Positions 174 through 55,245 of a DNA stretch of 64,000 nt are shown here, piece by piece. Source of the DNA: Octopus sinensis (taxonomy: Eukaryota); contig NC_043009.1 in the NCBI RefSeq assembly GCF_006345805.1, forward strand, positions 69,192,001-69,256,000, given 5' to 3'. The notes beneath the pieces are model-generated. The model made no database searches and was not told where the DNA came from. It worked only from the letters and a program-made list of their open reading frames with translations. Every line of letters starts with the position of its first letter. Position 1 is the first letter of the stretch. The position numbers and the translations under genes were made by a program.

Positions 174-314
174 GTCAATTCCGCACTGCTGTTGAACGTG
201 TCAATGGTTCATCTGGGGGTTTTAAAGCCAATGTTCATGGTGCTATCAGCCCTTATTCTGTCTTCAGTTTTGGTATTGTTTGGAATGAAGGAACTTCAAT
301 TTCCTCCTTTGTTG
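174..314 (+). CDS. Avidin-family gene A, internal exon (strands beta3-beta6): GQFRTAVERVNGSSGGFKANVHGAISPYSVFSFGIVWNEGTSISSFV
   Basis: aag|GT acceptor and G|gtgagt donor; 141 nt, phase 1-1, no stops. Aligns to chicken avidin GTYITAV...FGFTVNWKFSESTTVF. Paralogue at 31869-32006. Confidence 0.9.
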
Positions 315-1343: not shown

Positions 1344-1469
1344 GTCAGTGTATCCCCTCATCAAACAATGCCACCTTCTTGAAAACTCAGTGGACAATGC
1401 TTGTGGGACAGGAGACCTTTGATACCAGCTGGAAAGCTTTTTACAATGGAATGAACAATTTCTACAGAG
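1344..1469 (+). CDS. Avidin-family gene A, exon (beta6-beta8): GQCIPSSNNATFLKTQWTMLVGQETFDTSWKAFYNGMNNFYR
   Basis: Pyrimidine tract plus cag acceptor, G|gtgaga donor, 126 nt, phase 1-1. Aligns to avidin GQCF...LKTMWLL...DWKATRVGINIFTR. Paralogue at 33056-33181. Confidence 0.9.
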
Positions 1470-12655: not shown

Positions 12656-14399
12656 ACATGTAACCAATATTACATGCAATTAGAGGACAATGCTATGTTA
12701 TAGAATCAGTTAAGTGCCCAACCAAATGTCTTGTGGTATTTTGCTTTATCTTGTAGTGGGGAAGGTTTATCAAAAGATGAAGAGGTAGCAGATGCAATAG
12801 GAATGTGAATGACATCAAAGGAAAACAAGGGGAAAGCATTGGATTGTGATTTAAGTAATTTCTTTAATCGATGCTTGCATTTACTTGTTGTGTACCCCAG
12901 AAAATTCACTACCTTACCAACTTGCTTCGAGTTGGTGAGGAAGACAATAAACAGAGGAAATACTGTGTCAATGTGATGAGGAGGTAGAACCAGGCATGTT
13001 TTGTGTCTGTGTGTGCATTGGTCATTCGGTCGTGTCTGTTTATGTTCTGCAGCTGCTACTGTGTTAGGTTGTTTCTACTGAATATGTGGCTCTGTATTGC
13101 CTGCTTGACTGGTGCAAGTTACTTGTTGGCTGTCTCGCTTGGTGATGGCTCTCTGCAGTCCTTTGACGGATTGCTGTATTTATAATGGTCATGACAGCTA
13201 GAAGGACAGACATACCACAGGAGTAATTTCTACTCGTGTAGGTCGCTTCCTGTCCACTTGAACCTTGAATGACACAGCTCAGGTCATAGGTTAAAGGGAA
13301 ATTTATCCATCACTTTTTGACAGATCAAAGAGATTTCTTTCATGCCTATATGGCCAGCGGTGGATCAGATGAGTGACAATCCTTAAATTCAGTTCAAATC
13401 GCAGCTTGGATAAAGGAAGTGTTAGTTTTTACAATCTCCTTTACATTCTAAGTTCAAATCCTAATGAGTCAGTTTTGATCCTTCCAGTCTTAGGTGGGGT
13501 GGAGGGTCAATAAAATAAATATAAGTCAAATACTGAGACAGTATAATCAAATGTACTTCATGAAACCCAAACTCCTAAATTTCTGGTCTTTTATCCTTAT
13601 GAAGAATCAATATTAATAGCCAAGGAAGTGTTGAGACATCTTTGATGATAACATTTGTTTTAGAATTAAAAACCATTTTAATATAACTGGAGAATAAACA
13701 GGTGAATGAAAAAACGAATTTGTACCCTAGAAAATGAAGCAGGGGGGCAGACAATGGGAGATGTTTATATGTTGGTCAAGTGATAGTACAGCAAACTGGC
13801 AGAATTGTTAGCAGACCAGGGGAAAATGCTTAGCAGCATTTTGTCTGTCTTTATGTTCTGAGTTTAAATTCTGCCATGGTCAACCTTGCCTTTAATCTTT
13901 TTGGGGATTGATAAAACAAATACCAGTTATGCTCTGGGGTTGATGTAATCGACTTACCCTCTCCCACTGAAATTGCTTGCCTTGTGCCAGGATTTGAAAT
14001 CAATATATTGGTGTAGAGAGCAATTGAGATGTAAGGTAAAGTGCCAACAGGAATGGAACCTAATTATAAGTCCTTCTGTAGAATTTATTAGGAAGCCAGG
14101 AATATAGCAAAGCTGAAGAATAAACATCAAGATTCAAGTGGTTCAAGAATAGAAGATTTGGGGTTACAGGAATGTGTGTAGATGTTTGCTTCATAGACAT
14201 GTGATTCTGAATTTGACTTCACTTTGGGACACACAGAGAAAAGGTCTTCAACCATAGCATCAGGCTGACCAAAGCCTTATGAGTGAAATTATGTGGAAGC
14301 CTGTCTGATGTATATGTGGGTGGGGGTTACTGGGGAGCATAAATAGTTCTGAAGGAGCAGAAGAATTAGTAAGGCAGAAGCCATTTTACTGTGCATGGG

Positions 14400-16052: not shown

Positions 16053-16324
16053 AATAATGTAATTGGTAATAAATTGACTAAACAAAATGACTGTTACATT
16101 TTACAGATACTGAAGGAAGTTTCGCAAGTGTCTGGTTGAGTGAGGAAGGTATCGGAATCGAATTCAAAGAACCTAATAATGCACTGTCGGCTGAAGTTGT
16201 CTTTCCGTGTGGACGACAATACAGCGTTAAAGGTAAGAGTTTGCTTCTTCGCTTCAGTTACAAAGGAAACAACAAGATCTTAGAGACGTTCTTTCTTGGC
16301 TTATGAGTTCGTCTGAGATGTGAT

Positions 16325-16485: not shown

Positions 16486-17310
16486 TGAAAAATAAATATC
16501 TTGGTAGCATGATGGCATTGTCTTACACTGCACTGCAATACAATTGAATTGTCTCAGTCACCAGGTTATAGATGTACAACACGACACCTTAACACTTTAT
16601 ACTATTCAAATAACAGAAAGAAATAAATTAAACGCAAATATGATGGCACCTTCCGATTAAATGGTCGTCATGATTCTTTCACATTAAAGATACTTGAAAA
16701 CATCTTGCTTGTGGAAATCTCTACAAGGGAGATGCAAGTAGGTTTCAGGGGTCAGCAGGTGAGAATGGACACCATTTTGGGGCCTTCCTCTTGACCCACC
16801 CCACTCCCTGAAGTGAGGACCCTGACTGGATCAAATGACCAGTGTTTGAATATGGTAAAGCTTTGAATCAGAAGCAATTCTTTGGTAGAAAGATATCGAA
16901 GAAATGTCTGTTTTTACCATTCTGCAATATTATTTGAATGAAGGAAATGGATTTGAGAAAGTGATTTATTCTTCATTGATTCCTTTTTGCAGGTGCCATG
17001 ACCAACAACAACACATTGTACCTGTATGGAGCAAACCAGAGCACTGCCATTGGAGTAACAGGTACCATACATTTTGTTTTTCGCTCTTTTCCATAATTCC
17101 AAGAGAAGAATCTAGCTGCTCTTTTAAAGACTGGCCTTCACACAAATGCAAAACAAGGAATGGTATTAAAAGAAAAATGGGAAAACTGAAATAAGTGTGT
17201 GTATGTGTGTGTGTGTGTAACAAATGCAAATGTAAAACATAAGAAATGATAAAGTTTTAATATACAATATAAGCAAATGCTAGAATGCAATGTGTGTGTG
17301 TGTATATATA

Positions 17311-17577: not shown

Positions 17578-18321
17578 ATCATCATCATCATTTAACGTCC
17601 GCTTTCCATGCTAGTATGAGTTGGACGATTTGACTGAGGACTGGCGAACCAGATGGCTACACCAGGCTCCAATCTGATCTGGCAGAGTTTCTACAGCTGG
17701 ATGCCCTTCCTAACGCCAACCACTCCAAGTGTGTAGTGGGTGCTTTTATGTTCCACCAGCACAAGGGCCAGTAAGGCGGTGCCGGTAATGGCCACACTCA
17801 AATGGTGTTATTTACATGCCACCTGCACAGGAGCCAGTCCAGCGACACTGGCAACGACCTCACTCAAATGTTTTTTCATGTGCCAGTAAGTTGTCGCGGT
17901 AACAATCATGCTCGGATGGTGCTCTTAGTGCTCCACTAGCACAGATGCCAGTCTTTGAATTTGATTTCGATTTTGATTTCACTTGCCTCAACAGGTCGTC
18001 ACAAGCAGAGTTTAGTGTCCAATAAAGGAAAGGTATGCATAAGTGGGCTGGTTACACCCCTGGCATAGGCCACAAGGTTATGGTCTCACTTGGCTTGCCA
18101 GGTCTTCTCAAGCACATCATATTTCCAAAGGTCCTAGTCACTAGTCATTGCCTCGGTGAGGCCTAAAGTCCGAAGGTCATGCTTTACCACCTCATTCCAG
18201 GTCTTCCTGGGTCTAGCTCTTCCACAGGTTCCCTCAACTGCTAGGGTGTGGCACTTTTTCACACAGCTATCCTCATCCATTCTCGCCACATGACCATACC
18301 AGCACAGTCATCTCTCTTGTA
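17578..18321 (-). mobile_element. 5'-truncated RTE LINE (ORF C-terminus, 3' UTR and (GAT)n tail)
   Basis: About 18180-18320 on the minus strand reads WYGHVARMDEDSCVKKCHTLAVEGTCGRARPRKTW, followed by the tail family. Confidence 0.85.
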
Positions 18322-20248: not shown

Positions 20249-21071
20249 GTAAGTTTCTTGTAAATTTATGTATATTTTAGGAATATTTATGAATGATGTT
20301 CTCTAGTGATATTTGTGTTCATAATTTGTACACTTACTTCTATAGGTGTTCACGAGCCGGCTTTGGGCAGATTCAAAGCATTTGTCATACTGTTATGTTA
20401 TTTACACAGATTAGGATTAATATTTCTGTATGTATTAAAAAAAAAAAAATTCAATCAACATTCAAGCCATAAATCATCGTGTTTTCTTTTCTGGTTTAGT
20501 ATTATACTTATCCTGTTTATTTCACCAGTTTACAGTTGGTGGAGTAGCAACTACTTATAGGTTAAACAAACATTAGGGACATAACCATTTGCTCCTTCAA
20601 AACTAGTCATCCATGATGTTATGGTTATTTCTACAGAAATTACTGCCAGCACTGATTCTTTTGCTGCAAGGCATCAGATGTAAACAAACAATGAAACCAA
20701 AGACAAAGGCCACAATAATTTCTGTAGAAATAACCTTAACAAAATAATGTAAAGAGCACTGCTAACACAGTAGAACATGGTGTTGACCTACAAAAATATT
20801 TAATATACTTTATTTATATTATGGTTGCATAACGAACTACCAAGTACTTAGAGGTCATGTGGTTCGTAAGCAAGTTACTTACCACACAGCCACTCATTAA
20901 CTTATCGAAACAATATCAAACCATAACAAAAATGAAAACAGTAAGAGAGATGATTTGTAATTTTATTAATCAATATTATTAAATGTTCATATATCTTGTG
21001 AATTTCCTGTAAAAAAAAAAAATTGACAAGTTGTAGTGCACCTGAGCACTGTATACAATAATTTCATTATA

Positions 21072-22790: not shown

Positions 22791-24039
22791 GTAAAGATCA
22801 GGGTGGACAACATAACAAATGCTATCAATAGTTATAATAGATTAATGAGATTTTAACCTCATGTTTACAAATGAATAGTCACCAATATCTATAGAATATT
22901 ATAGCTTACAGCTACAAACCTAGTCTGAAAGCTTCGAAAAATAAGTTCCATTATGAAGTCATAGAGAAGCAGAAGCCTTTTGGAGGACAACATTTAAAAT
23001 TTTTGTGGAAATGTAAAAATCAGAAAACAAACACCAAACAACAGATTTTTCTATTTGAAAAAAATTAAAAGTTTAAAAAAACTGCTGGACTGTATTGGGA
23101 TGAATATTGTGTATTCTGTTAAAAATAAGGAAGACTAAAAGAATCTAGATCAAGATATGGAATCAAATGATTTTGGGGATGAGATTTCAACAAAGTGGCT
23201 AAAATCTAAAAGTCAGAAGACATCTTGAATCAATCATAATTACTGGAGAATCCAATTTATTTTATGGGATTTTCTCTTGTTACAAGTGTCTTTTATTTGA
23301 TGTAGAATTAATTACTTTCTCAAAAATTAATTTTATTGTATTTTGAAAATGTGATTTTATACTTAACTGATTGGGAAAGAAATTAATATTTTCTTGTAAT
23401 AGAATATTGACTAAAAGGAATTCTTCAAAGTGGTGCCTCAGCATGGCCACAGTCTAATTAGTGAAACAAATAAAAGATATAAATTAGTCAAATGTCTTAT
23501 TTTACTTCAAGAATTCTCAGGACCATCAAAAACTCTTGTGTGTGTGTCGTGTTGTTTTGTTTTTGCTTTTTTATATAGAATGGGAAATAATGGATTGTAA
23601 AATTCCAACTTTGACCCCAAAAGACTGTAAAATATTTATGGTAAAATAGCTGAATGTGGAAAAGATTTGGTCTTTCATACAAATTTAGTGATGAGGTGCC
23701 GAGGTGGCCCCACAAAGCACAAGGTGGGTTGAAGAATCAATCTGCAAGATTGTAAGGGATGAGGAGGCAGACTGCCAAAATGGGTGGGGCTGAAGGGTGG
23801 ATGAGCGACAAGCTATGAGTCAGGAGAGTTAGAGTGATGCAGAAGAGAGGAAGTGGCAAGCAGCAGGAGTAGATGATACACTTGTCAGTAGGACAAGAGA
23901 GAGGTTGACATGGCTGGTAGTCTGTAGGAATAAGGGGTAGGGTGATGGCAGGGAGATGAGGCTGGCCTGATGCTTGGGTGCTGGGGAGGAGTCACTGTAA
24001 TGTGAGTAGAGAGCACAATACATAGCACTTCCAGAATTT

Positions 24040-25366: not shown

Positions 25367-25542
25367 GACTTTTCTTCAAGACAAAGATCGGTCAACTCTT
25401 GAAGATTACACTGGTCAAGTATGATTATGCCAATTGCACTGAATATACTCCAACAAAACTATCTTCACATGAACTGAAACCAACTCAGACACTTTCTTAC
25501 AACCCTGACCTCTGGATGTACCATAACTATGATGATTATATG
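25367..25542 (+). CDS. Gene B exon: GLFFKTKIGQLLKITLVKYDYANCTEYTPTKLSSHELKPTQTLSYNPDLWMYHNYDDYM
   Basis: Long T-rich tract plus aag acceptor, ATG|gtaagt donor, 176 nt open frame, phase 1-0. Confidence 0.8.
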
Positions 25543-26629
25543 GTAAGTTATCTAATAATTAGCATTTGATTTCAATCATTATGTTGATGAGTTAATAATT
25601 TGCTGATAGTATTTCTGTATCTCTTTTTTTCCTGAGTTTCGCTGCACACTTGATTTATTTCAAAATAATAATAATGATAATTCTGCTCAATACCACAGAT
25701 TTGCTTGTCAGTTATTTGACCTTAACCAGTTGAGCATGTCCCTTAGTGGCTGACGATATGTGCATCTCTGATCACGAGCAGAAGTAGTGAGGGAGCATCA
25801 TAGCCATGTGTCGAGAGGGATTCTTTGGGGTTTGAATAATTCACCTCTGGAAACATGGGTGGTTCTTTCAATATCCTTAAACAACCCTTATTCAGGGACC
25901 TTTTGAGCGGGATGGGCTACTCAACCAGAAGAAAATTCTAACTGGGCCCCACCTGCAAGGTCATGTGCTGTTTATCTTTTTATGAGTTCACCATGTCGCG
26001 CACATATGGTTGTGATGCATGTGCCTGGTGTACCTTTATCAGACGGGTAGTCATGATGGGTATATTGGGCTTCGTAAATTTTACCCCAGTGTCACTTTGA
26101 TGGCATGAACTGCTCTCTCACTCAATAATAATAATAATAATAATGATAATAATAATAAGTAAGCATGATAATAATTATAAGTGCACCAGTAAGCATTTTT
26201 GAGACATTTGATGTTGAAAATTGCAAAATTTTTAAAGTCTGTACAATGTAATCATCATCATCATCATCATCATTATCGTTTAACGTCTGTTTTCCATGCT
26301 AGCATGGGTTGGATGGTTCGATCAGGGATCTGGGAAGCCAGAAGGCTGCACCAGGTTCCAGTCTGATCTGGCAGTGTTTCTACAGCTGGATGCCCTTCCT
26401 AACACCAACCACTCCATGAATGTAGTGGGTACTTTTTACGTGCCACTGGCACAGGTGCCAGGCGAGGCTGGCAACGACCATGATCAGTTGGTGCTTTTAA
26501 TGTGCCACCGGCACAGGGACCACAACTACAATTTCCATTGATTTAATTTTACTAGCAATCTAATATTTGCATGTTGTTTATATTTTGAATTTTAAAGTTT
26601 GTTTTTTTCTACTTTTATAAATTCTTCAG

Positions 26630-26652: not shown

Positions 26653-27377
26653 GTAATTTTGTTTATTAACTGTTATTTGGTTTTTAAAGATTGATAAATC
26701 TTGTAATCCTTTTCGTTTTCTTCATTATTTTCCTGGGAAGTGTGTTGCGTTGTTATTTTAAAGAAACTTTTCCTCCCCACCAGTTTCCTTTCTTTCTTGA
26801 TATGCTGGCATCGGTTGTTAGTTGTCAGAGCACTGCATCCTTCAAAACTTCCATGCTTCCTGAGATTCGCCAACACTACACCTGATTTTCTCCCCTCCAT
26901 ACACACGCAAGCATGTATCTGACTCATACACTGTTCGCTTCCCAGACATTTTTACATTACTGCATATGCTTTATACGCACTTTTGACAAGTTGTGGTAAG
27001 GTTTGGTGGAAGATCTTAATTCAAAACTTACTAAAGCAAGACATTTGTATTCAGAGCCAGAGCCGGTTTCAGCCAGGTTGGTAATGAAAGGGTTAATGTC
27101 TGTGTAATATAGAATACTATTGTAGTGTCACCATATGTAAATGTTTATATAACATAGAATTATAGTTTTTGTTGTGACAAAAGGACATCTGTGTTTTATA
27201 GGGCTCTAAAGGTGTGTAACCCTTTATATAAAATATCAATGTAACATATAACTATATTGATGTTTAACCAAGATGAAATGTCTGTGTAACCATTTATGTA
27301 TGTCTATGGAATAATGAAGTCTATGGCTGTGCTGCCAGATATCAATGTCCATAATATAGAATTCTCTTGCTATGCAG

Positions 27378-27548
27378 TAAGGTGACTTCTGAGAGTTCTA
27401 AACCCCAAAAATGGAACCATGGCATTCATAAGAATTCCAGTCTGATAAAGTTGTTAGAATTTTACTGTTTACCAACGTTAATCTACTTTCTTCTGATTCC
27501 TTTTCATAATGTTGGCTGCATTCTGGGACTTCCGAGCTTATAGTCAAG
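27378..27548 (+). CDS. Gene B exon: KVTSESSKPQKWNHGIH(fs)KEFQSDKVVRILLFTNVNLLSSDSF(fs)FIMLAAFWDFRAYSQ
   Basis: tatgcag acceptor and AAG|gtaagt donor. Needs +1 at AA 27430-27431 and +1 at TTTT 27501-27504. Confidence 0.65.
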
Positions 27549-27854: not shown

Positions 27855-28060
27855 CTCTTACTCTTTTACACATTTCAGTCATTTGACTGCAGCCATGCTG
27901 GAGCACTGCCCTTAGTCGAAAAAATCGATCCCAGGACTTATTCTTTGTAAACCTAGCACTTACTCTATCAGCCTCTTAGGCCAAACCACTAAGTTATGGA
28001 GATGTAAACACACCAACATCGGTTGTTGAGTGATAGTGGAGGTTCAAACACTGACACACA

Positions 28061-28108
<48 letters not shown>

Positions 28109-28863
28109 GCTTCTTTCAGTTTCCATCTACCAAATCCTCTCACAAGGCTTGATCAGCTTGAGGCTATAGTAGAAGACACTTAACCAAGGTGCCATGCAGT
28201 GAGACTTAAACCAGAATCATGAGGTTGATAAGGAAGCTTCTTACCATACAGCCACTGCTGCACACACACACACACACCACACACACACACACACACACAG
28301 AGTCTTAGTCTAATTCAGAATTGCACCCAAAACTCAAAATTTGAAAAGTGAAAGTGGAACCGGTTATTATGTTGGAAGAAAAAAAACCTTATTTTGTAGA
28401 ATATTGCATAAAACCTCTGCAATTATGATTCTCATATATTCTTCAGTCTTGTAAAACAAATCTTGTGTTTTTCCATCTTATTTCTTTCTGTATATATTCA
28501 ACCACTTGTAATATATGTGTGTGTGGAGGCGCATGGCTCGGTGGTTAGAATGTCAAGCTTATGATCATGAGGTTGTGAGTTCAAATCCCGGACCGGGCTG
28601 CATGTTGTGTTCTTGAGCAAGACACTTTATTTCACATTGCTCCAGTTTACTTATCTGTAGAAATGAGTTGCAACATCACTGGTGCCAAGCTGTATCGGCC
28701 CCTTTGCCTTTCCCTTGGATAACACTGGTGGTGTGGAGAGAGGGGAGGCCAGTATGCATGGGCGACTGCTGGTCTTCCATAAACAAACTTGCCCGGACTT
28801 GTGCCTGGAAGGGTAACTTCCTAGGTGCAATCCCATGGTCAGTCATGACTGAAGGGGGTCTCA

Positions 28864-28899
<36 letters not shown>

Positions 28900-29105
28900 C
28901 TCTTACTCTTTTACACATTTCAGTCATTTGACTGCAGCCATGCTGGAGCACTGCCCTTAGTCGAAAAAATCGATCCCAGGACTTATTCTTTGTAAACCTA
29001 GCACTTACTCTATCAGCCTCTTAGGCCAAACCACTAAGTTATGGAGATGTAAACACACCAACATCGGTTGTTGAGTGATAGTGGAGGTTCAAACACTGAC
29101 ACACA

Positions 29106-29155
<50 letters not shown>

Positions 29156-29305
29156 GCTTCTTTCAGTTTCCATCTACCAAATCCTCTCACAAGGCTTTGA
29201 TCAGCTTGAGGCTATAGTAGAAGACACTTAACCAAGGTGCCATGCAGTGAGACTTAAACCAGAATCATGAGGTTGATAAGGAAGCTTCTTACCATACAGC
29301 CACTG

Positions 29306-29340
<35 letters not shown>

Positions 29341-29900
29341 CTTAGTCTAATTCAGAATTGCACCCAAAACTCAAAATTTGAAAAGTGAAAGTGGAACCGG
29401 TTATTATGTTGGAAGAAAAAAAACCTTATTTTGTAGAATATTGCATAAAACCTCTGCAATTATGATTCTCATATATTCTTCAGTCTTGTAAAACAAATCT
29501 TGTGTTTTTCCATCTTATTTCTTTCTGTATATATTCAACCACTTGTAATATGTGTGTGTGGAGGCGCATGGCTCGGTGGTTAGAATGTCAAGCTTATGAT
29601 CATGAGGTTGTGAGTTCAAATCCCGGACCGGGCTGCATGTTGTGTTCTTGAGCAAGACACTTTATTTCACATTGCTCCAGTTTACTTATCTGTAGAAATG
29701 AGTTGCAACATCACTGGTGCCAAGCTGTATCGGCCCCTTTGCCTTCCCTTGGATAACACTGGTGGTGTGGAGAGAGGGGAGGCCAGTATGCATGGGCGAC
29801 TGCTGGTCTTCCATAAACAAACTTGCCCGGACTTGTGCCTGGAAGGGTAACTTCCTAGGTGCAATCCCATGGTCAGTCATGACTGAAGGGGGTCTCAGCA
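27852..29900. repeat. Tandem duplication of about 1.04 kb (27852-28866 and 28897-29900) made of SINE fragments between (TA)n tracts
   Basis: The differences seen between copies are microsatellite and homopolymer lengths only. Confidence 0.95.
28523..28864 (+). mobile_element. tRNA-derived SINE (family 1 head, different tail); duplicate at 29557-29898
   Basis: TGGCTCGGTGG box A, GAGTTCAAATCC box B, TGTTCTTGAGCAAGACACTT. Confidence 0.85.
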
Positions 29901-29929
29901 TATATATATATATATATATATATATACAG

Positions 29930-30021
29930 TCCTAAGAAGTGAAACTATGGTTTATATCTGGCACCTGTCTATCACACACATTCGGTTCACAGCTTGTTTT
30001 CAACTCCAGTCTTTGATTAAG
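29930..30021 (+). CDS. Gene B exon starting VLRSE; downstream frame ambiguous (one base short)
   Basis: tacag acceptor after (TA)n and AAG|gtaaga donor. 92 nt where 93 is needed to join the next exon in phase 1. Confidence 0.55.
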
Positions 30022-30488: not shown

Positions 30489-30649
30489 CTTGGCCCAATG
30501 GCTCATCTGTTGAATTTGTCCTTTAATCCTGAACAACATTAATCTTTCATCTGTCATAATAGCACCCTGGTGTAATCTGAATGGAACTTGGTACAATGAA
30601 CTGGGCTCTTCAATGTTTATAAGACAAACTGAAAATGGTTTGTTGGAAG
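30489..30649 (+). CDS. Gene B exon, linker plus avidin beta1-beta3: AWPNGSSVEFV(fs)PLILNNINLSSVIIAPWCNLNGTWYNELGSSMFIRQTENGLLE
   Basis: CNLNGTWYNELGS is the avidin/streptavidin signature (chicken CSLTGKWTNDLGS, streptavidin GTWYNQLGS). ttacag acceptor, G|gtaagc donor. Needs +1 at CC 30520-30521. Confidence 0.88.
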
Positions 30650-31613
30650 GTAAGCAAAATCTATTTTCAATGCATTATAACATAGAATATTATTGTTTAC
30701 ATTATCTGAATTCAGTACCAGACCATTTTATTTCATGAATTTTTGTATTATTTGAAATGTTTTTGCTTATTATTACTTCTACATATTTGTTAACTCTTTT
30801 TGAGTTTCATCTTATTTCTCCGTGTCCCAACAGGACAGGAAAGTCAGCCGGTTTTCAGGGCTTTGACTCTTTTGAACATCTTTACGCTAATGACCCCCTG
30901 TTTTTGGTGGAATCAACCCTTCCACTAACAAATACATTAGTGTAGGAACTTTGATGCAATCCTTTAAAACTAGAATAAAAGTCAAGTCAAAGATTTATAT
31001 ATGTAGATTTAAAGGAACATTTTTTATGGTGCGCACATAATTTTATGTCTATTGAAGGGATAAAGCTTTCAATGCTTTACAGACTCATGGTTGTATAGAA
31101 TATAAACATCAAAGTGGTGTATATAGAGCAGCTGTGTGGAAGAGAAACATCAATGTGGTTTATATACCACAACTATGTACAATATAAAACATTAAAGGGG
31201 TGTGTATATACTGCAATTGTACACACCATCAACATCAATGCATTGTATATACCACAACTTTGTTTAATATACAATGGAACACTGATATAACCACAGAGTT
31301 ATTTCTTGATGTCAAATTCCTAAAACTATTTTTCATAATGTAAACGATGATGATGATGTTAAGAGAACAAGATATGAGAGAGAAGATGGAAGCACCCAAT
31401 ACACTGAAGCTGATAAATCCGTCAAGCCACCTCCCTGTCTTAAAAAAAAGAAAATGAACACATTAAATGATGTAGTCCATGGTACATTGTGACTGGAAGA
31501 AAGACAGAATGGTCAAGGCTTGATCAGAAGCTGACCTGGAGCTAAACTACAAATAATAACAGTTCTTAAGATTTTGTTGTGTCCAGCATTTTTATATTGT
31601 TGTTTTGTATTGG

Positions 31614-31648
<35 letters not shown>

Positions 31649-31868
31649 CACATGCACACACACACACACAATATGATGGGCCAAATCAGTAATCTTGGAA
31701 CCAAGTTCAGCACAATATAACTACCATTAATAGAACAGCAACACCTTTGTCCACCGTTCCCTTAATTTGTCCAAATTTGATGCTCATGGCTTTGAAAGAC
31801 AGTAAAAGCAGTGTTACCAAAGTATTCATAATTTCATTAATTTTGGGTAATTTTTTATTTTATTCAAG

Positions 31869-32006
31869 GTCAATATAACACTGCTGTCGAACGTAACAAT
31901 GGTACCTCTGGAGGAGGTAAAGCAGATCTTCATGGTACCATCAGTTACTCAGTCTTTAGTTTTGGTGTTGTTTGGAATGAAGGAACTTCCATTACTGTCT
32001 TCAGTG
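31869..32006 (+). CDS. Gene B exon: GQYNTAVERNNGTSGGGKADLHGTISYSVFSFGVVWNEGTSITVFS
   Basis: caag acceptor, G|gtgagt donor, 138 nt, phase 1-1. Avidin Y33/T35/W70/S75/T77/F79 equivalents are present. Confidence 0.92.
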
Positions 32007-32251
32007 GTGAGTAGTAGTAACAAAAGTATACACACCCACATATATATATATATGTATGTTATACATACATACATACAACATACAGAAACAAATAAATAAC
32101 AACAGATGGAAAATGTGTCAATACCCTACAGCTGTTTCCAATGAATTTTTAATTGATTAACAGAGATATTACATCATTAGTAAAAAACAGTTACATCAGG
32201 TGAATACATGAGCCACAACATTCAAAAGTATTCAAAGTCAACGGGATGTGA

Positions 32252-32285
<34 letters not shown>

Positions 32286-32439
32286 GGTGGCTGCCCCCTC
32301 ATCGAGTATGGCCATTGCACAAAGCTTAATCAATGTTGTTATCGTGCAATGACTGTGCAAGAAGATTTTTTTTAAGTGGAGAAAGGCTGTGCACTGAGTC
32401 AATCCCACTCACTAAGCAACAGCAGCCATAATCTGAAAA

Positions 32440-32835
32440 GAAGAACAAGTTAACATTATCGGTAACCATTGGGCCGCAGGTTTTATGTCGGAGTTATCCC
32501 AGTTACCTGAGTTACCTTCTCCTAGAAGGATGCCCTAACAAAGGCTAGGAGTCCTTCACTCCTAATGGTTTAACTGCATGATCGGGTATTCAGTCCGATT
32601 ATTTCTATGTCCCCGTGCATGATACAGTCTTAAGATGTTTATTGGATGGCCGTTGACTCTCAAGAGTTCCTCTGCCCTTTGACGGGTTTTGTTTTTCATC
32701 CCGCAGGGTGTCCAATAAACACCCTCCTCACCAAGCAAACTTGGTGGGGTTGCTGGTTTAGTCGCCGACGACCCGACCATGCAACAGGTTGTACTGGGTT
32801 ACATGTTACCAGTAGCACACGAAAGTGACCTGACA
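32440..32835 (-). mobile_element. Hairpin-rich retroelement fragment, possibly an RTE 5' UTR or a derived SINE
   Basis: CTAGGAGAAGG..AACTC motif recalled from RTE 5' regions, plus several consecutive hairpins. Confidence 0.45.
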
Positions 32836-32946
32836 CTATATATGTTGTTAAGATGTTTTTATTTATTGTCACATAATGTGTTTTGTTGACATTTTACTTT
32901 ATTAAATGCCTAATGCCTACCCTGAGAATTAACTTATGGTCTGTCT

Positions 32947-32996
<50 letters not shown>

Positions 32997-32998
32997 TA

Positions 32999-33029
<31 letters not shown>

Positions 33030-33055
33030 AATATGTGTGTGTTTGTGTTCTCTAG

Positions 33056-33181
33056 GTCAGTGTATCCCTTCATCAAACAATGGCATTGTGTTGAAAGCCC
33101 ACTGGTCATTGGTTGCAGCTCAAAGATCTGTTAAGACCAGCTGGAGTGCATTTTACACAGGAATGGACAATTTCTACAAAG
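33056..33181 (+). CDS. Gene B exon: GQCIPSSNNGIVLKAHWSLVAAQRSVKTSWSAFYTGMDNFYK
   Basis: tctag acceptor, G|gtgaga donor, 126 nt. C83/W97/W110/N118 equivalents are present. The following intron start is homologous to that of gene A. Confidence 0.92.
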
Positions 33182-34253: not shown

Positions 34254-36755
34254 CTGTAGCTACTTAAAGAGGGTGTGATTAATATTTATCACAATGTGCT
34301 GGTGGCACGTGAAAGCACTTTTTGAGCATTGGGCCTCATAGAGGCAAGGACCAAGACCATTTGGCATTATGCTGGGCTTTGAGCATTGGGCCTCACAGAG
34401 GCAATGACTCAGTCTTTTGGCATTATGTTGGGCTTGAGAATAAAAACCATCAAGCCAAGGAAAATCACAGTAATGGCAGATACTGGATTCATGCAAATGG
34501 CACATAAAAGCACCCATTACACTCTTGGAGTGGTTGGCATTAGGAAGGGCATCCAGCTGTAGAAACCATGCAAAAACAGACTGGTGTCTGGTGCAGACTT
34601 TCAACTTACTAGTCCTGGTCAAACCGTCCAACCCATGCCAGCATGGACAATGGACGTTAAATGATGATGATGATGATGATGTAGACACAATAAAACAACA
34701 GAATCCAGCGAAACTAGTGACAGTCTACATTTGCAAATAGTAAGAGTAAATTGGCAAGGGTTGGCAGCAGCAGTAAGAATAAAGACAAACCTGATGTTTC
34801 AGATTGGGCTTTTCTTCAGAAAGAAGGAACCCAGGTTCCCAGAAGGACTCATGGCATAATTTCAGATCTTTTTTCTAACTCACTGTAACCACCATCATCA
34901 TCATTTAACGTCCGCTTTCCATGCTAGCATGGGTTGGACAATTTGACTGAAGTCTGGCGAACCAGACTCCAATCTGATCTGGCAGAGTTTCTACAGCTGG
35001 ATGCCCTTCCTAATGCCAACCACTCCGAGAGTGTAGTGGGTGCTTTTATGTGCCACCGGCACGAGGGCCAGTTTGGTGGTACTGGCAACGGTCACGCCCA
35101 AATGGTGCTTTTTACATGCCACTTACACAGGAGCCAGTCCAGCGGCACTGACGATGACCTCGCTCGAATGTTTCACGTTCCACCAGCACAATTGCTAGTA
35201 AGGTGATGCGGTAACAATCACGCTCGAATGGTGTGTTTAACGTGCCATCAGCATGAAGGCCAGCTTGTTGCTCTGGCAATGATCTCACTCGTATGGTACT
35301 CTTAGTGCTCCACAACCAACGGATGCCAGTCACCCAGCTTATTTCACTTTTATTCACTTTAAGATTTGAACCTTCCTCTTCCATGTCATTTTAACATCCA
35401 CTTTCCCATGCAGCATTGGTCAAGGAAAATTTCCTAGGGCTGGATGTGCCTCCTGATTGTTGTTTTGAAAAGATATAATGTTGTACCCAGTGTGTTTCTA
35501 AATATTCCAGAAGAGTTTTAATAACAGGATGAGTAATTGGCAGAGTTAAGAGAGCACAGGACAAAATGATTGATAAAATAAAGAACCAATCAAGGAAATT
35601 GGAATGGTAGAAATGTTAGATCTTCAGACAAGATTCCTTGCTGTGTTTGTTTTTGGTCTTTTATAATGTGTATTTTTAGATGAAGTTGGTGAGTTAGCAG
35701 AATTGTCAGCATGCCAGACAAAATGCTTGGCAGCATTTCGTCTATCTTTATGTTCTGAGTTCTAATTCCACTGAGGATGCCTTTCATCCTTTCAGTGTTG
35801 ATAAAATAAGTACCAGTTAAGTACTAGGGTCAATGTAATCGACTTATCCCCTCCCCCGAAATTGCTGGCCTTGTGCCAAAATTTGAAACTAGTATGAATT
35901 ATCCACTTTAAAACCATTACCTGATCCTTGGGTTCCTTTTATGAAGTTTTCAAACATTTGGGTCAGGTGTCTGACTGGGATAGAATTTCTTTCCCACCAG
36001 GTTTATGGGCCCCTTCCATCTTTTCCTCCCTCTGATCCTTCCAAGATTAATTAGTGAAAAATAAATGTCTTGAACACTGAAGTCTGGTTGTCGAAAATAT
36101 AGCTTCTTAGAAAAGGAAACTGCATCCTGTTTGTGAGGGGTGGACAAGGGATGGATTTCACCTTAATGTGACTGCGTATAATTATGTGAATTTATTCTTT
36201 TATACTCTAGGCACAAGGCTCAAAGTTTTGGGGGAGTGGGGGCAGTCGATCAGATCAACCCCAGTACACATCTGGTACTTAATTTATTGACTTGGCAAAG
36301 TCGACCTCAGTGGAATTTGAACTCAGAATGTAAAGACAGACGAAATACTGCTAAGCATTTCGCCTGGAATATAAATGTTTCTGCCAGCTTGCCACCTTCA
36401 TTATGGAAATTGATTCATATCATTCATCTTCCACGCTGGCATCAGTTGGACAGTTTGACAGGAGCTGGCAAGCCTGAGTGCTGCACCAGGCTCCAGCTGC
36501 CTGTTTTGGCAAGGTTTCTATGGCTGAATGCTCTTCCTAAGGCCATCCGCTTCACAGAGTGTACTGGGTGCTTTTTGTAAGACACCAGCACAGGTGCTTC
36601 TTCTGTGGCACTGGCATGGATGCTATATATATGTATATATATGTATATATATATAAATTTAAAATGGTGAGAAATTAGATATTAATTTAATTAACATCGA
36701 TGTCACACCAGTGGTCTAGCATATAAAAAAACTGAAGGTCCAGTAAAATTGTATT

Positions 36756-37123: not shown

Positions 37124-37140
37124 ATTCTAAAGAGGAATAA
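37124..37140 (+). CDS. Gene B terminal coding exon (DSKEE*), followed by 3' UTR
   Basis: tttatttcag acceptor and matching phase. Downstream sequence is homologous to that of gene A. Confidence 0.78.
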
Positions 37141-40068: not shown

Positions 40069-41181
40069 CTATACTGTACAAATACATTTGTGCTTAGTTA
40101 AACGATTACTGTGGGAGAAGGAGATACCACAGCTATCACAGTGATATGGTTTTTCTTTAGTATGAATACGTTTATGGACAGTTAAAGCAGTACTTTGGGA
40201 GAAGGATTTACCACAGATATCACAAGGATATGGTTTTTCCCCAGTATGAATACGTTTGTGTCCCTTTAACACATTACTTTGATTAAATGCTTTACCGCAA
40301 ATATCACAATGGAATCGTTTTTCTCCAGTATGAATGCGTTTATGAGCAGTCAAGCCACTATTTCGTGGGAATGATTTACCACAGATATCACACTCATACG
40401 GTTTCTCTCCTGTATGAACATGTTTGTGAATAGTTAATTCATCATTTCGAGAGAATGATTGGTCACAGATATCACAGAGATAAGGCTTTTCTCCTGTATG
40501 AATACGTTTGTGTCTAGTTAGCTGATAATTTAGATTGAATGATCGACCACAGAAATTACACTGAAATGTTTTTTCTCCAGTATGAATGCGTTTATGAGCA
40601 GTCAATTCACTATTTCGAGGGAATGATTTACCACAAAAATCACACCAATATGGTTTCTCTCCTGAATGAACATGTTTATGAGCAGTTAACTGATCATTTC
40701 GCGGAAATGATTTGTCACAGATTTTACAGTGATAGGGCTTTTCTCCTGTATGAACACGTTTGTGTTTAGTTAGCTGATTACTTTGATTGAATGATCGACC
40801 ACAGAAATCGCATTGAAATGGTTTTTCTCCAGTATGAATGCGTTTGTGATCAGCTAAGTTGGAACGTTTAGAGAATGATTTACTGCACATATCACACCGA
40901 TAAGGTTTCTCTCCTGTGTGGATACGCCAGTGTTCGGTAAAAATATCTTTACGAATGAACGCTTGACCACAGATTTCACATCTATATGGTTTCTCTCCTG
41001 TATGGTGACGTTTATGAATAAGCAGCTCATCGGTTCGAGAGAATGGTCGACCACAGATATCACAGTGATATGGTTTCTCTCCCGTATGAATACGTCTGTG
41101 AGTTGTAAGAAGACTTTTTGTAGTCAATGATTTTTCACAAATATCACACTGATACAAAGTCTTTCCTGATTTTTTTGCCAT
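40069..41181 (-). CDS. C2H2 zinc-finger protein, 370 aa, 13 fingers (last is C2HC), no effector domain seen
   Basis: Intact ORF with TGEKP linkers and 28-aa periodicity. Confidence 0.97.
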   Translation of the reverse strand: MAKKSGKTLYQCDICEKSLTTKSLLTTHRRIHTGEKPYHCDICGRPFSRTDELLIHKRHHTGEKPYRCEICGQAFIRKDIFTEHWRIHTGEKPYRCDMCSKSFSKRSNLADHKRIHTGEKPFQCDFCGRSFNQSNQLTKHKRVHTGEKPYHCKICDKSFPRNDQLTAHKHVHSGEKPYWCDFCGKSFPRNSELTAHKRIHTGEKTFQCNFCGRSFNLNYQLTRHKRIHTGEKPYLCDICDQSFSRNDELTIHKHVHTGEKPYECDICGKSFPRNSGLTAHKRIHTGEKRFHCDICGKAFNQSNVLKGHKRIHTGEKPYPCDICGKSFSQSTALTVHKRIHTKEKPYHCDSCGISFSHSNRLTKHKCICTV

Positions 41182-47913: not shown

Positions 47914-48774
47914 CTATACTGTACAAATACATTTGTGCTTAGTTAAACGATTACTGTGGGAGAAGGAGATACCACAGCTATCACAGTGATATGGTTTTTC
48001 TTTAGTATGAATACGTTTATGGACAGTTAAAGCAGTACTTTGGGAGAAGGATTTACCACAGATATCACAAGGATATGGTTTTTCCCCAGTATGAATGCGT
48101 TTGTGTCCCTTTAACACATTACTTTGATTAAATGCTTTACCGCAAATATCACAATGGAATCGTTTTTCTCCAGTATGAATGCGTTTATGAGCAGTCAAGC
48201 CACTATTTCGTGGGAATGATTTACCACAGATATCACATCCATACGGTTTCTCTCCTGTATGAACATGTTTGTGAATAGTTAATTCATCATTTCGAGAGAA
48301 TGATTGGTCACAGATATCACAGAGATAAGGCTTTTCTCCTGTATGAATACGTTTGTGTTTAATTAACTGATTATTTTGATTGAATGATCTACCACAGAAA
48401 TCACAATGATATGGTTTTTCTCCAGTATGAATGCGTTTGTGATCAGTTAAGTTAGTACTTTTAGCGAATGACTTACTACACATATCACATTGATATGGTT
48501 TCTCTCCTGTGTGAATACGTCTGTGTGTGGTTAAAATATCCCTACGAGTGAACGATTGACCACAGATATCACATTCATATGGTTTCTCTCCAGTATGGAC
48601 ACGTTTGTGAATAGTTAACTCATCAGTTCGAGAGAATGCTTTACCACAGATATCACAGTGATATGGCTTCTCTCCCGTATGAATACGTATATGAGTTGTA
48701 AGATGACCTTTTGTAGTGAATAACTTTTCACAAATATCACACTGACATAAGGACTTTCCAAAGTTTTTCGCCAT
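47914..48774 (-). CDS. C2H2 zinc-finger protein, 286 aa, 10 fingers (last is C2HC), paralogue of 40069-41181
   Basis: Intact ORF; the C-terminal fingers are nearly identical to copy 1. Confidence 0.97.
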   Translation of the reverse strand: MAKNFGKSLCQCDICEKLFTTKGHLTTHIRIHTGEKPYHCDICGKAFSRTDELTIHKRVHTGEKPYECDICGQSFTRRDILTTHRRIHTGEKPYQCDMCSKSFAKSTNLTDHKRIHTGEKPYHCDFCGRSFNQNNQLIKHKRIHTGEKPYLCDICDQSFSRNDELTIHKHVHTGEKPYGCDICGKSFPRNSGLTAHKRIHTGEKRFHCDICGKAFNQSNVLKGHKRIHTGEKPYPCDICGKSFSQSTALTVHKRIHTKEKPYHCDSCGISFSHSNRLTKHKCICTV

Positions 48775-54970: not shown

Positions 54971-55245
54971 CGAAGCAGACGACATCGAAGCGCACTTCTG
55001 AACGGCTGAAAATTTCTGCGCTCCAAATTACTAAAAGGTAAGTGGAAACAATTGATGCCACATCAAAGCTGTTTTGCGGCTGAGACATCCAGAAATCAAT
55101 GTATCCAGTAATTTTAGCAGGAATGTGTAAAACATTGTTTTTATAAACTTTGACTTGTTTCATACAAACATTAAAAAGGTTTATTGTTTTCTCCAGACAT
55201 CGTTACCACTAACTTCAGCATTCGTTTATTATCACCAATTGTCAT

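What the first reader, a model, noticed from the sequence alone, without database searches (positions are those of the whole stretch)
30571..33181. Gene B avidin domain keeps essentially the whole canonical biotin pocket
Seen, by alignment to chicken avidin numbering: N12, L14, S16 (NELGS), Y33, T35 (GQYNTAV), W70, S75, T77, F79 (VWNEGTSITVF), W97 (AHW), W110 (TSW), D at N118 (as streptavidin D128), and the C4-C83 disulfide pair. Established: these residues form the ureido H-bond network and the aromatic cage, and W110 is donated by a neighbouring subunit. Inference: a real high-affinity, probably tetrameric biotin binder, unlike the fibropellin avidin-like domain, and a possible new avidin scaffold for biotechnology.
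Basis: partly seen in the sequence, partly recalled or inferred. Interest (0 to 1): 0.72.

Follow-up and report, generated by a model that had tools for sequence, protein, structure and literature searches.

The report
Octopus avidin domain, intact biotin pocket
Three exons in an octopus genome encode a true avidin-family domain that keeps every residue gripping the ring end of biotin, and it looks like the last module of a larger protein that alternates working avidin barrels with unrecognisably diverged ones, not a small stand-alone avidin.

Summary
Exons 30563-30649, 31869-32006 and 33056-33181 (+ strand, all phase-1 introns) encode a 116-aa avidin domain: Pfam PF01382 E=1.6e-25, AlphaFold2 (AF2) model pLDDT 95, TM 0.9 to zebavidin and avidin. 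"Essentially the whole pocket" overstates it: of the 20 avidin residues within 4 Å of biotin, 13 are identical and N118 is D. Six at the valerate end differ (T38E, A39R, T40N, F72E, S73G, S101A), all at positions that vary across the family.

The window is from a close relative of Octopus vulgaris (94-97% DNA identity). "Gene B" is probably not a small stand-alone avidin. Upstream exons (16107-16232, 16993-17061, 25367-25542) encode a 124-aa domain with no sequence match to anything, yet its predicted fold matches only avidins. In Argonauta the same order, signal peptide then [cryptic barrel + avidin] twice, is annotated as one 536-aa protein.

In Octopus the splice acceptor that joins the second pair is TTG, not TAG. 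So it is unresolved whether the domain is secreted as part of the larger protein or made as a leaderless 135-aa avidin. Biotin binding is likely but unmeasured, and a homotetramer is unproven. I class it as a new variant of a known kind, of moderate interest.

The parts
30563..30649 (+). Avidin domain B, exon 1 (beta1 to start of beta3): (A)PWCNLNGTWYNELGSSMFIRQTENGLLE(G). Carries C3 (avidin C4), N11 (N12), L13 (L14), S15 (S16) and the sequon N6-G-T.
   Evidence: Acceptor ataatag|CA and donor GAAG|gtaagc read. Translation. Identical in O. vulgaris.
31869..32006 (+). Avidin domain B, exon 2 (beta3 to mid beta6): (G)QYNTAVERNNGTSGGGKADLHGTISYSVFSFGVVWNEGTSITVFS(G). Carries Y31, T33, V35, the L3,4 loop E36-R37-N38 with sequon N39-G-T, W64, E66, G67, S69, T71 and F73. 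It also holds a cryptic internal donor, GGAG|GTAAAG, at 31917.
   Evidence: The O. vulgaris exon is intact with three differences, two of them synonymous. The O. vulgaris model P0002 uses the cryptic donor.
33056..33181 (+). Avidin domain B, exon 3 (rest of beta6, beta7, L7,8, beta8): (G)QCIPSSNNGIVLKAHWSLVAAQRSVKTSWSAFYTGMDNFYK(D). Carries C77 (C83), W91 (W97), L93 (L99), W104 (W110) and D112 (N118).
   Evidence: Four of the five non-synonymous differences from O. vulgaris fall in the L7,8 region of this exon.
37124..37140 (+). Terminal exon (D)SKEE-stop. An AATAAA signal at 37136 overlaps the stop codon.
   Evidence: The same C-terminus, DSKEE, occurs in the O. bimaculoides and O. vulgaris proteins.
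27509..27548 (+). Linker exon, MLAAFWDFRAYSQ(A). It is orthologous to the Argonauta linker TSFWDTPLNNK(A). The position of the Argonauta TAG acceptor reads TTG here (27512-27514). There is an in-frame TGA at 27494 and no AG in between. So this is either the first coding exon (ATG at 27509) or an internal exon entered through a GT-TG intron at 27515.
   Evidence: The 100 bases around it are identical in O. vulgaris.
16107..16232 (+). Cryptic avidin-fold domain, exon N1: (D)TEGSFASVWLSEEGIGIEFKEPNNALSAEVVFPCGRQYSVK(G). Its phase-1 acceptor fits the phase-1 donor of gene A's last avidin exon at 1469.
   Evidence: tblastn with Argonauta P0003; sequence and splice sites. It is the only AG|AT.C..A.G-type acceptor between 1470 and 16200.
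16993..17061 (+). Cryptic avidin-fold domain, exon N2: (G)AMTNNNTLYLYGANQSTAIGVT(G). It ends in phase 1 in a Gly codon seven residues into predicted beta6, the same position and phase as the avidin exon 2/3 junction (VFSG|QC).
   Evidence: Strand positions from the two models.
25367..25542 (+). Cryptic avidin-fold domain, exon N3: (G)LFFKTKIGQLLKITLVKYDYANCTEYTPTKLSSHELKPTQTLSYNPDLWMYHNYDDYM. It ends in phase 0 at ATG|gtaagt.
   Evidence: 97.9% identical in O. vulgaris.
174..314 (+). Gene/module A avidin domain, exon 2 (exon 1 lies upstream of the window): (G)QFRTAVERVNGSSGGFKANVHGAISPYSVFSFGIVWNEGTSISSFV(G). Y33 is Phe and T77 is Ser.
1344..1469 (+). Gene/module A avidin domain, exon 3: (G)QCIPSSNNATFLKTQWTMLVGQETFDTSWKAFYNGMNNFYR, ending in phase 1.
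27202..27219 (+). Mini-exon GSKGV-stop, which the O. vulgaris annotation uses to end the upstream 230-aa gene. It is doubtful: it is not conserved in Argonauta and no poly(A) signal follows it.

Best explanation
Exons 30563-33181 encode a canonical avidin domain that should be able to bind biotin. I propose it is the C-terminal module of an octopod-specific secreted protein. That protein is built from repeated pairs of a cryptic, pocket-less avidin-fold barrel followed by a canonical avidin barrel.

Shown:
- Avidin family membership and fold.
- Retention of the whole bicyclic-ring binding site and the L7,8 Trp.
- The order of exons in the window: avidin A, cryptic barrel, linker, avidin B, stop plus poly(A) signal.
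- The same order annotated as one signal-peptide-bearing 536-aa protein in Argonauta.

Inferred:
- The domain binds biotin tightly through the avidin mechanism: ureido H-bonds from N11, S15, Y31, T33 and D112; a Trp/Phe cage of W64, F73 and W91; and W104 capping a neighbouring barrel's site.
- It reaches the secretory pathway as part of the larger chain, with the linker exon entered through a non-canonical GT-TG intron.
- The cryptic barrels serve as built-in partners for the avidin barrels.
- The biological role is biotin sequestration in defence or egg protection, as proposed for other avidins.
For: Family and fold:
- Pfam E=1.6e-25.
- PDB sequence hits are avidins only.
- The AF2 model has pLDDT 95.3 and eight strands. 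Foldseek gives TM 0.87-0.91 to 4bj8, 2uyw, 1avd and AVR4.

Pocket:
- 13 of 20 residues within 4 Å of biotin are identical, plus N118D.
- Gene B carries the family consensus at the strongly conserved columns (N 59/62, S 61/62, Y 54/62, W 58/62, W 62/62, W 61/62, D 50/62). F73 is the minority residue at its column (W 48, F 12), as in chicken avidin.
- The pocket is kept in O. bimaculoides and in both Argonauta domains despite 54-61% overall identity.

One larger gene:
- Argonauta GAB1601784.1 is signal peptide + N-domain + avidin + N-domain + avidin.
- Its N-domain exons are found in the window between the two avidin domains, on the same strand and in the same order.
- Module A's last avidin exon ends in phase 1. 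The only matching acceptor downstream is N1 at 16107, and no separate terminal exon for A was found.
- There is no AATAAA or ATTAAA between 27200 and 27560, whereas AATAAA overlaps the final stop at 37136.
- The linker exon is orthologous to Argonauta linker 2, and entry at 27515 is in frame with N3.
- Argonauta linker 1 is itself annotated with a TG acceptor. TG 3' splice sites are documented in humans (PMC2374985).

Secretion:
- A conserved Cys pair in each barrel, and conserved N-X-S/T sequons.

Cryptic barrel:
- The AF2 model has eight meander strands and pLDDT 71.
- All 50 top Foldseek PDB hits are avidin-family proteins, TM 0.54-0.71.
- An intron of the same phase sits at the same beta6 Gly as in the avidin domain.
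Against: - The acceptor of the linker exon is TTG in both the window and O. vulgaris. An in-frame TGA lies five codons upstream and there is no AG in between. Canonical splicing therefore cannot join the cryptic barrel to avidin B.
- The O. vulgaris annotation splits the locus into a 230-aa gene and a 105-aa gene.
- The Argonauta model may be homology-projected rather than supported by transcripts. I had no RNA data.
- The N-domain model rests on three sequences. It has only moderate confidence and weak Foldseek E-values (about 1e-3). Sequence and profile methods see no avidin similarity.
- Between the window and O. vulgaris, the 408-nt CDS has 5 non-synonymous and 4 synonymous differences. 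That is too few to show constraint.
- Six valerate-end contacts differ, and E66 puts an acidic side chain where avidin has F72.
- No binding, oligomer or expression data exist.
Confidence: 0.55

Rival explanations
1. Stand-alone leaderless avidin. After loss of the AG acceptor, the second avidin domain became its own gene. Translation starts at ATG 27509 and gives a 135-aa cytosolic protein (MLAAFWDFRAYSQA + domain + DSKEE). It would form homo-oligomers and bind biotin, comparable to the leaderless fungal tamavidins.
For: - The reading frame from ATG 27509 to the stop at 37140 is complete, uses canonical splice sites throughout, and has A at -3 of the ATG.
- The O. vulgaris annotation calls exactly this gene start.
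- The acceptor is TTG, with an in-frame stop just upstream.
- A TATATAAAA motif lies about 280 bp upstream.
- From my own knowledge: tamavidins lack signal peptides.
Against: - No poly(A) signal separates it from the upstream coding exons. The upstream 'terminal' mini-exon is not conserved in Argonauta.
- The conserved disulfide pair and N-glycosylation sequons fit a secreted protein.
- The 14-residue N-terminus is simply the orthologue of an internal linker.
- The putative 5' leader contains several upstream ATGs.
Confidence: 0.25
2. An avidin-like module that no longer works mainly as a biotin binder. It would instead be an oligomerisation or structural module, or a binder of another small ligand, as in sea-urchin fibropellin.
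For: - It sits in a multi-domain context.
- Six of 20 contact positions are changed at the valerate end, and a sequon lies in the lid loop.
- Module A has Y33F and T77S.
- Fibropellin is a precedent (Yanai 2005, cited in PMC10336842).
Against: - All ring-binding residues and all four aromatic residues are kept, including W110, the residue that is Lys in fibropellin (ref 55).
- They are conserved across octopods.
- The changed positions are the ones that vary among proven binders.
Confidence: 0.1
3. A decaying remnant. Loss of the acceptor cut the second avidin domain off from its gene, and it is no longer expressed as protein.
For: - TAG has become TTG at the acceptor.
- The ratio of non-synonymous to synonymous differences from O. 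vulgaris is 5:4.
- Public gene models are inconsistent and partly mis-spliced.
- No O. sinensis-type model turned up in the protein searches.
Against: - All exons are open with intact canonical splice sites in the window and in O. vulgaris, and the O. bimaculoides protein model is intact.
- The pocket is fully conserved, and none of the 13 differences from O. bimaculoides touches it.
- The stop codon is embedded in a poly(A) signal.
- Argonauta linker 1 also lacks an AG acceptor although that model is otherwise intact.
Confidence: 0.1

Closest known systems
Vertebrate avidins: chicken avidin, AVR4, BBP-A, xenavidin, zebavidin
   Same: - Same Pfam family and the same eight-stranded barrel, TM 0.87-0.91.
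- Same ring-binding residues, aromatic cage, L7,8 Trp and C4-C83 cysteine pair.
- Exon sizes are comparable to zebavidin's 211, 120 and 42 bp: here 87+138, 126 and 17 bp.
   Different: - Only 33-37% identical.
- N118 is Asp, as in streptavidin.
- The L3,4 lid is E-R-N-N-G-T rather than T-A-T-S; F72 is Glu and S73 is Gly.
- There is one extra intron.
- It is not preceded by its own signal-peptide exon. A linker and a cryptic barrel come first.
Sea-urchin fibropellin C-terminal avidin-like domain
   Same: An avidin-fold domain at the C-terminus of a larger extracellular invertebrate protein (PMC10336842).
   Different: - Fibropellin has Lys at the W110 position and does not bind biotin (titles of Laitinen 1999 and Yanai 2005). 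Here the Trp and the other contacts are kept.
- No EGF repeats: Pfam finds only Avidin in the Argonauta protein.
Engineered dual-chain and single-chain avidins (e.g. PDB 2c4i)
   Same: Several avidin barrels in one polypeptide. 2c4i is the best PDB sequence hit, E=7e-20.
   Different: The engineered proteins are fusions of circularly permuted, binding-competent avidins. Here natural, non-permuted barrels alternate, and every other one appears to have lost the pocket.
Tandem two-avidin-domain proteins of other marine invertebrates (Argonauta LOC115218420-like, Sepia pharaonis, Owenia, Ridgeia, Actinia)
   Same: They are the next-best database relatives, 35-40% identical, and share the invertebrate-type 'Y-x-T-A-V-E' motif and L3,4 loop.
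   Different: Both of their domains are recognisable avidin domains, and many end in a hydrophobic tail. None has the cryptic barrel.
Tamavidins (fungal, leaderless)
   Same: If the ATG-27509 model is right, this too is an avidin without a signal peptide. Tamavidin 2 is a distant PDB hit, E=1.7e-4.
   Different: Much lower similarity than to animal avidins. The octopus domain keeps the animal-type disulfide cysteines.

Membership tests
Avidin family (Pfam PF01382) | Profile match above the curated threshold over the full domain | tested here: met
   E=1.6e-25, 90.2 bits against a cut-off of 24, profile positions 1-115 of 116.
Avidin family (Pfam PF01382) | Eight-stranded up-and-down beta-barrel | tested here: met
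   AF2 model with pLDDT 95.3 and eight strands. Foldseek TM 0.87-0.91 to zebavidin, xenavidin, avidin and AVR4. This is a prediction, not an experiment.
Biotin-binding avidins | Ureido/thiophene H-bond residues N12, S16, Y33, T35, T77 and N118 (or D) | tested here: met
   N11, S15, Y31, T33, T71 and D112 by HMMER alignment to avidin and AVR4. Reference residue list from PMC1831776.
Biotin-binding avidins | Aromatic cage W70, F79 and W97, plus W110 in loop L7,8 | tested here: met
   W64, F73, W91 and W104. W is present in 58-62 of 62 homologues at the three Trp columns. Whether W104 really reaches a neighbouring site cannot be tested here.
Biotin-binding avidins | Valerate/carboxylate contacts T38, A39, T40, F72, S73 and S75 | tested here: not met
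   Only S75 (S69) is kept. The rest are E36, R37, N38, E66 and G67. These columns vary across the family, and BBP-A binds biotin with Ala at S73. This lowers confidence in the affinity, not in membership.
Biotin-binding avidins | Measured biotin binding | not testable with these tools
   Needs recombinant protein.
Tetrameric avidins | Homotetramer (dimer of dimers) | not testable with these tools
   No multimer modelling was available. The alternating-barrel context makes a simple homotetramer uncertain.
Animal (chicken-type) avidins | Intramolecular C4-C83 disulfide and an N-terminal signal peptide | tested here: inconclusive
   Both cysteines are present (C3, C77). There is no signal peptide in the ATG-27509 model. 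A signal peptide is seen only at the start of the Argonauta two-module protein.
Fibropellin-type non-binding avidin-like domain | Loss of W110 (Lys instead), attached to EGF repeats | tested here: not met
   W104 is present. No EGF domain in the Argonauta orthologue. The flanking exons encode the cryptic barrel.
Dimeric bacterial avidins (rhizavidin, shwanavidin, hoefavidin) | No L7,8 Trp (feature recalled from my own knowledge) | tested here: not met
   The L7,8 Trp is present, and the best matches are tetrameric animal avidins.
Avidin fold (for the upstream 124-aa N-domain) | Avidin-type barrel, with or without sequence similarity | tested here: inconclusive
   For: all top-50 Foldseek hits are avidin-family, TM 0.54-0.71, E about 1e-3. 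The strand register matches, and the phase-1 intron sits at the same beta6 Gly. Against: no Pfam hit, hhalign probability 0.7%, pLDDT only 71 from three sequences.

The most novel reading that the evidence does not exclude
Octopods make a natural 'single-chain avidin'. One secreted polypeptide carries four avidin-fold barrels in alternation: two have diverged beyond sequence recognition and lost the pocket, and two are fully competent biotin binders. The dead barrels would replace the partner subunits of the classical tetramer, giving a defined two-site binder. In Octopus the last live barrel is joined through a non-canonical GT-TG intron, or is in the course of splitting off as a separate leaderless gene.
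Probability: 0.3. Interest if true: 0.7.

Novelty: new variant of a known kind. Interest (0 to 1): 0.45.

Why it matters
Avidins are workhorse reagents, yet their natural biology outside birds, frogs, fish, fungi and bacteria is barely explored. I found no paper on a cephalopod avidin in the searchable library.

If the domain binds biotin, it adds a mollusc member with a streptavidin-like Asp and a different lid loop. The context would matter more. A chain that alternates live and dead avidin barrels would be nature's version of the engineered dual-chain and single-chain avidins. It could give defined valency without protein engineering, and it would show how a tetramer interface can be internalised by duplication and decay.

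The TAG-to-TTG acceptor change gives a concrete, testable case of either non-canonical splicing or gene fission in octopus.

Tried and rejected
1. A 10-nt micro-exon path, N3 -> 27202-27211 (GGCTCTAAAG|gtgtgt) -> 30563, is in frame. I rejected it as unsupported because the segment has no counterpart in Argonauta. It is better explained as a gene-finder's way of closing the upstream ORF.
2. I looked for an alternative signal-peptide exon for gene B between 17062 and 30562. Apart from microsatellite artefacts, only one candidate appeared: 20613-20679, MMLWLFLQKLLPALILLLQGIR, with a weak GTAAAC donor, inside the N2-N3 intron. I did not adopt it.
3. Sequence-level identification of the N-domain failed. 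Pfam gave nothing at E<=10. hhalign against the avidin alignment gave nothing. The word-indexed protein searches gave nothing. The PDB profile search gave only a 50-residue hit to one RCC1 blade of RPGR at E=0.001, which I take as spurious.
So I could make no three-species dN/dS estimate and could not see module A's upstream part.
5. Literature searches for cephalopod, mollusc or invertebrate avidins found only immunostaining uses of avidin and papers on vertebrate and bacterial avidins. Yanai 2005 (PMC2253421) is not held.
6. The dimeric bacterial-avidin type is rejected because the L7,8 Trp is present. The fibropellin type is rejected for the same reason and for the lack of EGF repeats.
Full report
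**What is at the coordinates.** The window is eukaryotic, with microsatellites, only short ORFs and clear GT-AG introns. Three + strand exons, 30563-30649, 31869-32006 and 33056-33181, each bounded by a canonical acceptor and donor and all with phase-1 introns, join to a 116-residue peptide, PWCNLNG...MDNFYK. It matches Pfam Avidin (PF01382) at E=1.6e-25 over essentially the whole profile. Among solved structures it matches only avidin-family chains. The best is a dual-chain avidin; AVR4, zebavidin, AVR2, avidin and xenavidin follow at E=1e-15 to 1e-12, and streptavidin and tamavidin are far weaker. An AlphaFold2 (AF2) model built on 62 homologues has mean pLDDT 95.3 and eight strands. Foldseek places it on zebavidin, xenavidin, avidin and AVR4 at TM 0.87-0.91 and rmsd 1.4-2.1 Å. 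The feature is real and is not a chance resemblance.

**The residues.**
- C4/C83 -> C3/C77
- N12, L14, S16 -> N11, L13, S15
- Y33, T35 -> Y31, T33
- W70, S75, T77, F79 -> W64, S69, T71, F73
- W97 -> W91
- W110 -> W104
- N118 -> D112

As a yardstick I used the 20 residues within 4 Å of biotin listed for BBP-A and avidin (PMC1831776). Thirteen are identical and N118D is conservative. Six differ: T38E, A39R, T40N, F72E, S73G and S101A. All six surround the valerate/carboxylate end. The part of the site that holds the bicyclic ring is untouched.

Across 62 homologues, gene B has the majority residue at every strongly conserved pocket column except F79, where W is commoner (W 48, F 12) and gene B, like chicken avidin, has Phe. 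Five of the six changed positions (the three L3,4 columns, F72 and S73) are the variable columns; S101 was not tabulated. BBP-A binds biotin with Ala at the S73 position.

**Which organism, and is the site conserved.** The nearest proteins are an uncharacterised O. bimaculoides protein (A0A0L8HYT7) and a hypothetical O. vulgaris protein. The O. vulgaris locus is 94-97% identical to the window at the DNA level, so the window comes from a close relative of O. vulgaris. None of the 13 amino-acid differences from O. bimaculoides touches a pocket residue. Both avidin domains of the Argonauta hians orthologue keep the pocket, apart from T35S in one and T77A in the other, at only 54-61% overall identity. 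Between the window and O. vulgaris the 408-nt coding sequence has five non-synonymous and four synonymous changes, too few to say anything. Four of the five non-synonymous changes fall in the L7,8 region and one in the L3,4 loop.

**The gene is not what it seemed.** The public O. vulgaris model starts at an ATG at 27509 (MLAAFWDFRAYSQ), runs through the three avidin exons and ends in a 17-nt exon, DSKEE-stop, at 37124-37140. That model also mis-splices exon 2 at a cryptic internal donor at 31917. The resulting 135-aa protein has no credible signal peptide, although it keeps the disulfide cysteines and two N-glycosylation sequons.

The exhaustive representative search returned a 536-aa Argonauta hians protein, GAB1601784.1, named after O. 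sinensis LOC115218491. It reads: signal peptide, a domain of about 140 aa, avidin, a second domain of about 125 aa, a linker, avidin. tblastn of that protein against the window finds the second unknown domain as three + strand exons, 16107-16232, 16993-17061 and 25367-25542. They lie exactly between the partial avidin domain at the window's start ('gene A', exons 174-314 and 1344-1469) and gene B.

Several points fit one transcription unit:
- Gene A's last avidin exon ends in phase 1.
- The only fitting acceptor before gene B is the one at 16107, and no separate terminal exon for A was found.
- There is no poly(A) signal between 27200 and 27560, whereas AATAAA overlaps the final stop codon at 37136.

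**The splice-site problem.** The 'first exon' of the O. vulgaris model is the orthologue of the Argonauta linker exon: AAFWDFRAYSQ against TSFWDTPLNNK. In Argonauta it is entered through a normal TAG acceptor. At the aligned position the window and O. vulgaris read TTG. They are identical to each other over 100 bases there, with an in-frame TGA at 27494 and no AG in between.

The preceding exon ends in phase 0 at 25542, so splicing to 27515 would be in frame (...DDYM|AAFWDF...), but only through a GT-TG intron. The Argonauta model uses just such a TG acceptor for its first linker exon. TG acceptors are documented, though as rare alternatives, in human genes (PMC2374985).

Without RNA data I cannot decide between three possibilities:
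- A multi-module secreted protein. I prefer this because of the cysteines, the sequons, the missing poly(A) signal and the non-conserved 'GSKGV-stop' mini-exon that the O. vulgaris annotation needs.
- A leaderless stand-alone avidin created by gene fission.
- A module on its way to decay.

**The unknown domain.** It has no Pfam match at E<=10. It shows no profile similarity to the avidin alignment (hhalign probability 0.7%). The word-indexed protein searches found no relatives. The PDB profile search gave only a weak hit, probably spurious, to a single RCC1 blade.

Its three known copies share two invariant cysteines and an N-C-T sequon. An AF2 model from these three sequences (pLDDT 71, with the last 18 residues disordered) is an eight-strand meander. 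Its strand register nearly superimposes on that of the avidin domain. Its 50 best Foldseek matches in the PDB are all avidin-family proteins: shwanavidin, wilavidin, hoefavidin, avidin, BBP-A, rhizavidin, bradavidin 2, afifavidin, streptavidin and others, at TM 0.54-0.71 and 10-21% identity.

As independent support, its second intron lies in phase 1 in a Gly codon seven residues into beta6 (IGVTG|LF; VAG|QLF in Argonauta). That is the same phase and position as the avidin exon 2/3 junction (VFSG|QC). By strand-register mapping, which is an inference, it lacks N12, S16, Y33, W70, W97 and W110. I therefore read it as a very diverged, pocket-less avidin-fold barrel, with moderate confidence.

**How it most likely works.** The avidin domain should bind biotin in the standard way:
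- The ureido ring is held by N11, S15 and Y31 on one side and T33 and D112 on the other.
- The thiophene is contacted by T71.
- The ring is enclosed by W64, F73 and W91.
- W104, from loop L7,8 of a partner barrel, closes the site.

This mechanism is established for avidin and streptavidin and is inferred here. The lid loop (E-R-N-N-G-T-S-G-G-G), E66 and G67 make the carboxylate end different. That could lower affinity or change off-rates, and glycosylation of N39 could interfere.

However, if the chain really alternates dead and live barrels, part of the tetramer's contacts would be intramolecular and heterotypic. By analogy with other avidins the biological role would be biotin sequestration in defence or egg protection. 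No expression data were available.

**Comparison with what is known.** By every test I could run, the domain is a member of the avidin family. It is closest in sequence and fold to the animal avidins at 33-37% identity. It is not of the fibropellin type, because the L7,8 Trp is kept and there are no EGF repeats. It is not of the dimeric bacterial type either. What it works like (a biotin binder) is well supported by sequence but untested.

Relatives are widespread in marine invertebrates: amphioxus, hemichordates, a crinoid, corals, an anemone, annelids and a cuttlefish. Some are labelled 'avidin-like' automatically and several have two canonical domains in tandem. I found no paper on a cephalopod avidin in the held library. 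The pairing with a cryptic avidin-fold barrel was seen only in Argonauta and in the window; the O. vulgaris locus also has the last N-domain exon.

**Verdict.** I class it as a new variant of a known kind, with interest 0.45. The most novel reading not excluded is a natural single-chain pseudo-tetrameric avidin, with probability about 0.3.

Noticed in passing
window 16107-16232, 16993-17061, 25367-25542 (+): A 124-aa domain with no detectable sequence relatives outside octopods. Its predicted fold matches only avidin-family structures, and it shares an intron position and phase with the avidin domain. It appears to be a cryptic, pocket-less avidin barrel.
   Followed up: yes
window 27494-27515; L002 (Argonauta) 23995-24010 and about 14325-14340: The linker-exon acceptor is TTG in the window and in O. 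vulgaris where Argonauta has TAG. The first linker exon in Argonauta is itself annotated with a TG acceptor. This points to non-canonical GT-TG splicing, or to gene fission or decay.
   Followed up: partly
window 31917 (inside avidin exon 2): A cryptic donor, GGAG|GTAAAG, sits inside the exon. The O. vulgaris protein model uses it, which deletes beta4-beta6 in frame. It is probably an annotation artefact, but it could be an alternative isoform.
   Followed up: partly
window 174-314 and 1344-1469 (+): A second, partial avidin domain ('gene A'), 65% identical to B over the shared part. It has Phe at the Y33 position and Ser at T77, so its pocket is slightly weakened. Its first exon and everything upstream lie outside the window.
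   Followed up: partly
window 2427-6248: A 16-bp CT-rich minisatellite (CTTATCACCTCCTGGC) of about 239 copies. It causes the local GC of 0.56-0.61 and strong strand skew, and it generates long spurious ORFs. It lies in the 14.6-kb gap between avidin A and the cryptic-barrel exons.
   Followed up: no
window 40069-41181 (-) and 47914-48774 (-): Two intronless C2H2 zinc-finger ORFs of 370 and 286 aa with nearly identical C-terminal halves. O. vulgaris has a 370-aa gene at the matching place downstream of the avidin locus.
   Followed up: no
window 55245-62318 and 62274-64000: Two long satellite arrays: a 157/313-bp unit (about 45 copies of the 157-bp period, 91-95% matches) followed directly by a different 160-bp unit (about 11 copies, 97% matches) that runs off the end of the window.
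   Followed up: no
window about 27870-29935: A tandem duplication of about 1 kb in the intron between the linker exon and avidin exon 1, relative to O. vulgaris. The ORF sets at 28651-28951 and 29682-29935 are duplicates, and both copies map to the same stretch of L001.
   Followed up: no
window 20613-20679 (+): A signal-peptide-like ORF, MMLWLFLQKLLPALILLLQGIR, followed by a weak phase-1 donor (GTAAAC) that would be in frame with avidin exon 1. It lies inside the N2-N3 intron and may well be chance.
   Followed up: no
proteins P0004, P0005, P0007, P0010, P0013 (Argonauta, Owenia, Actinia, Ridgeia, Sepia pharaonis): A separate, widely distributed family of proteins with two canonical avidin domains in tandem. 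Many have a C-terminal hydrophobic tail, which suggests membrane or GPI anchoring. They look like natural 'dual-chain avidins', and I found no literature on them.
   Followed up: partly
window 17578-17921, 26251-26522, 34890-35137: Copies of a short interspersed repeat (ATCATCATC...TTTAACGTC...CCATGCTAGCATGGGTTGGA...). It also occurs several times in the O. vulgaris locus and once in the Argonauta locus.
   Followed up: no
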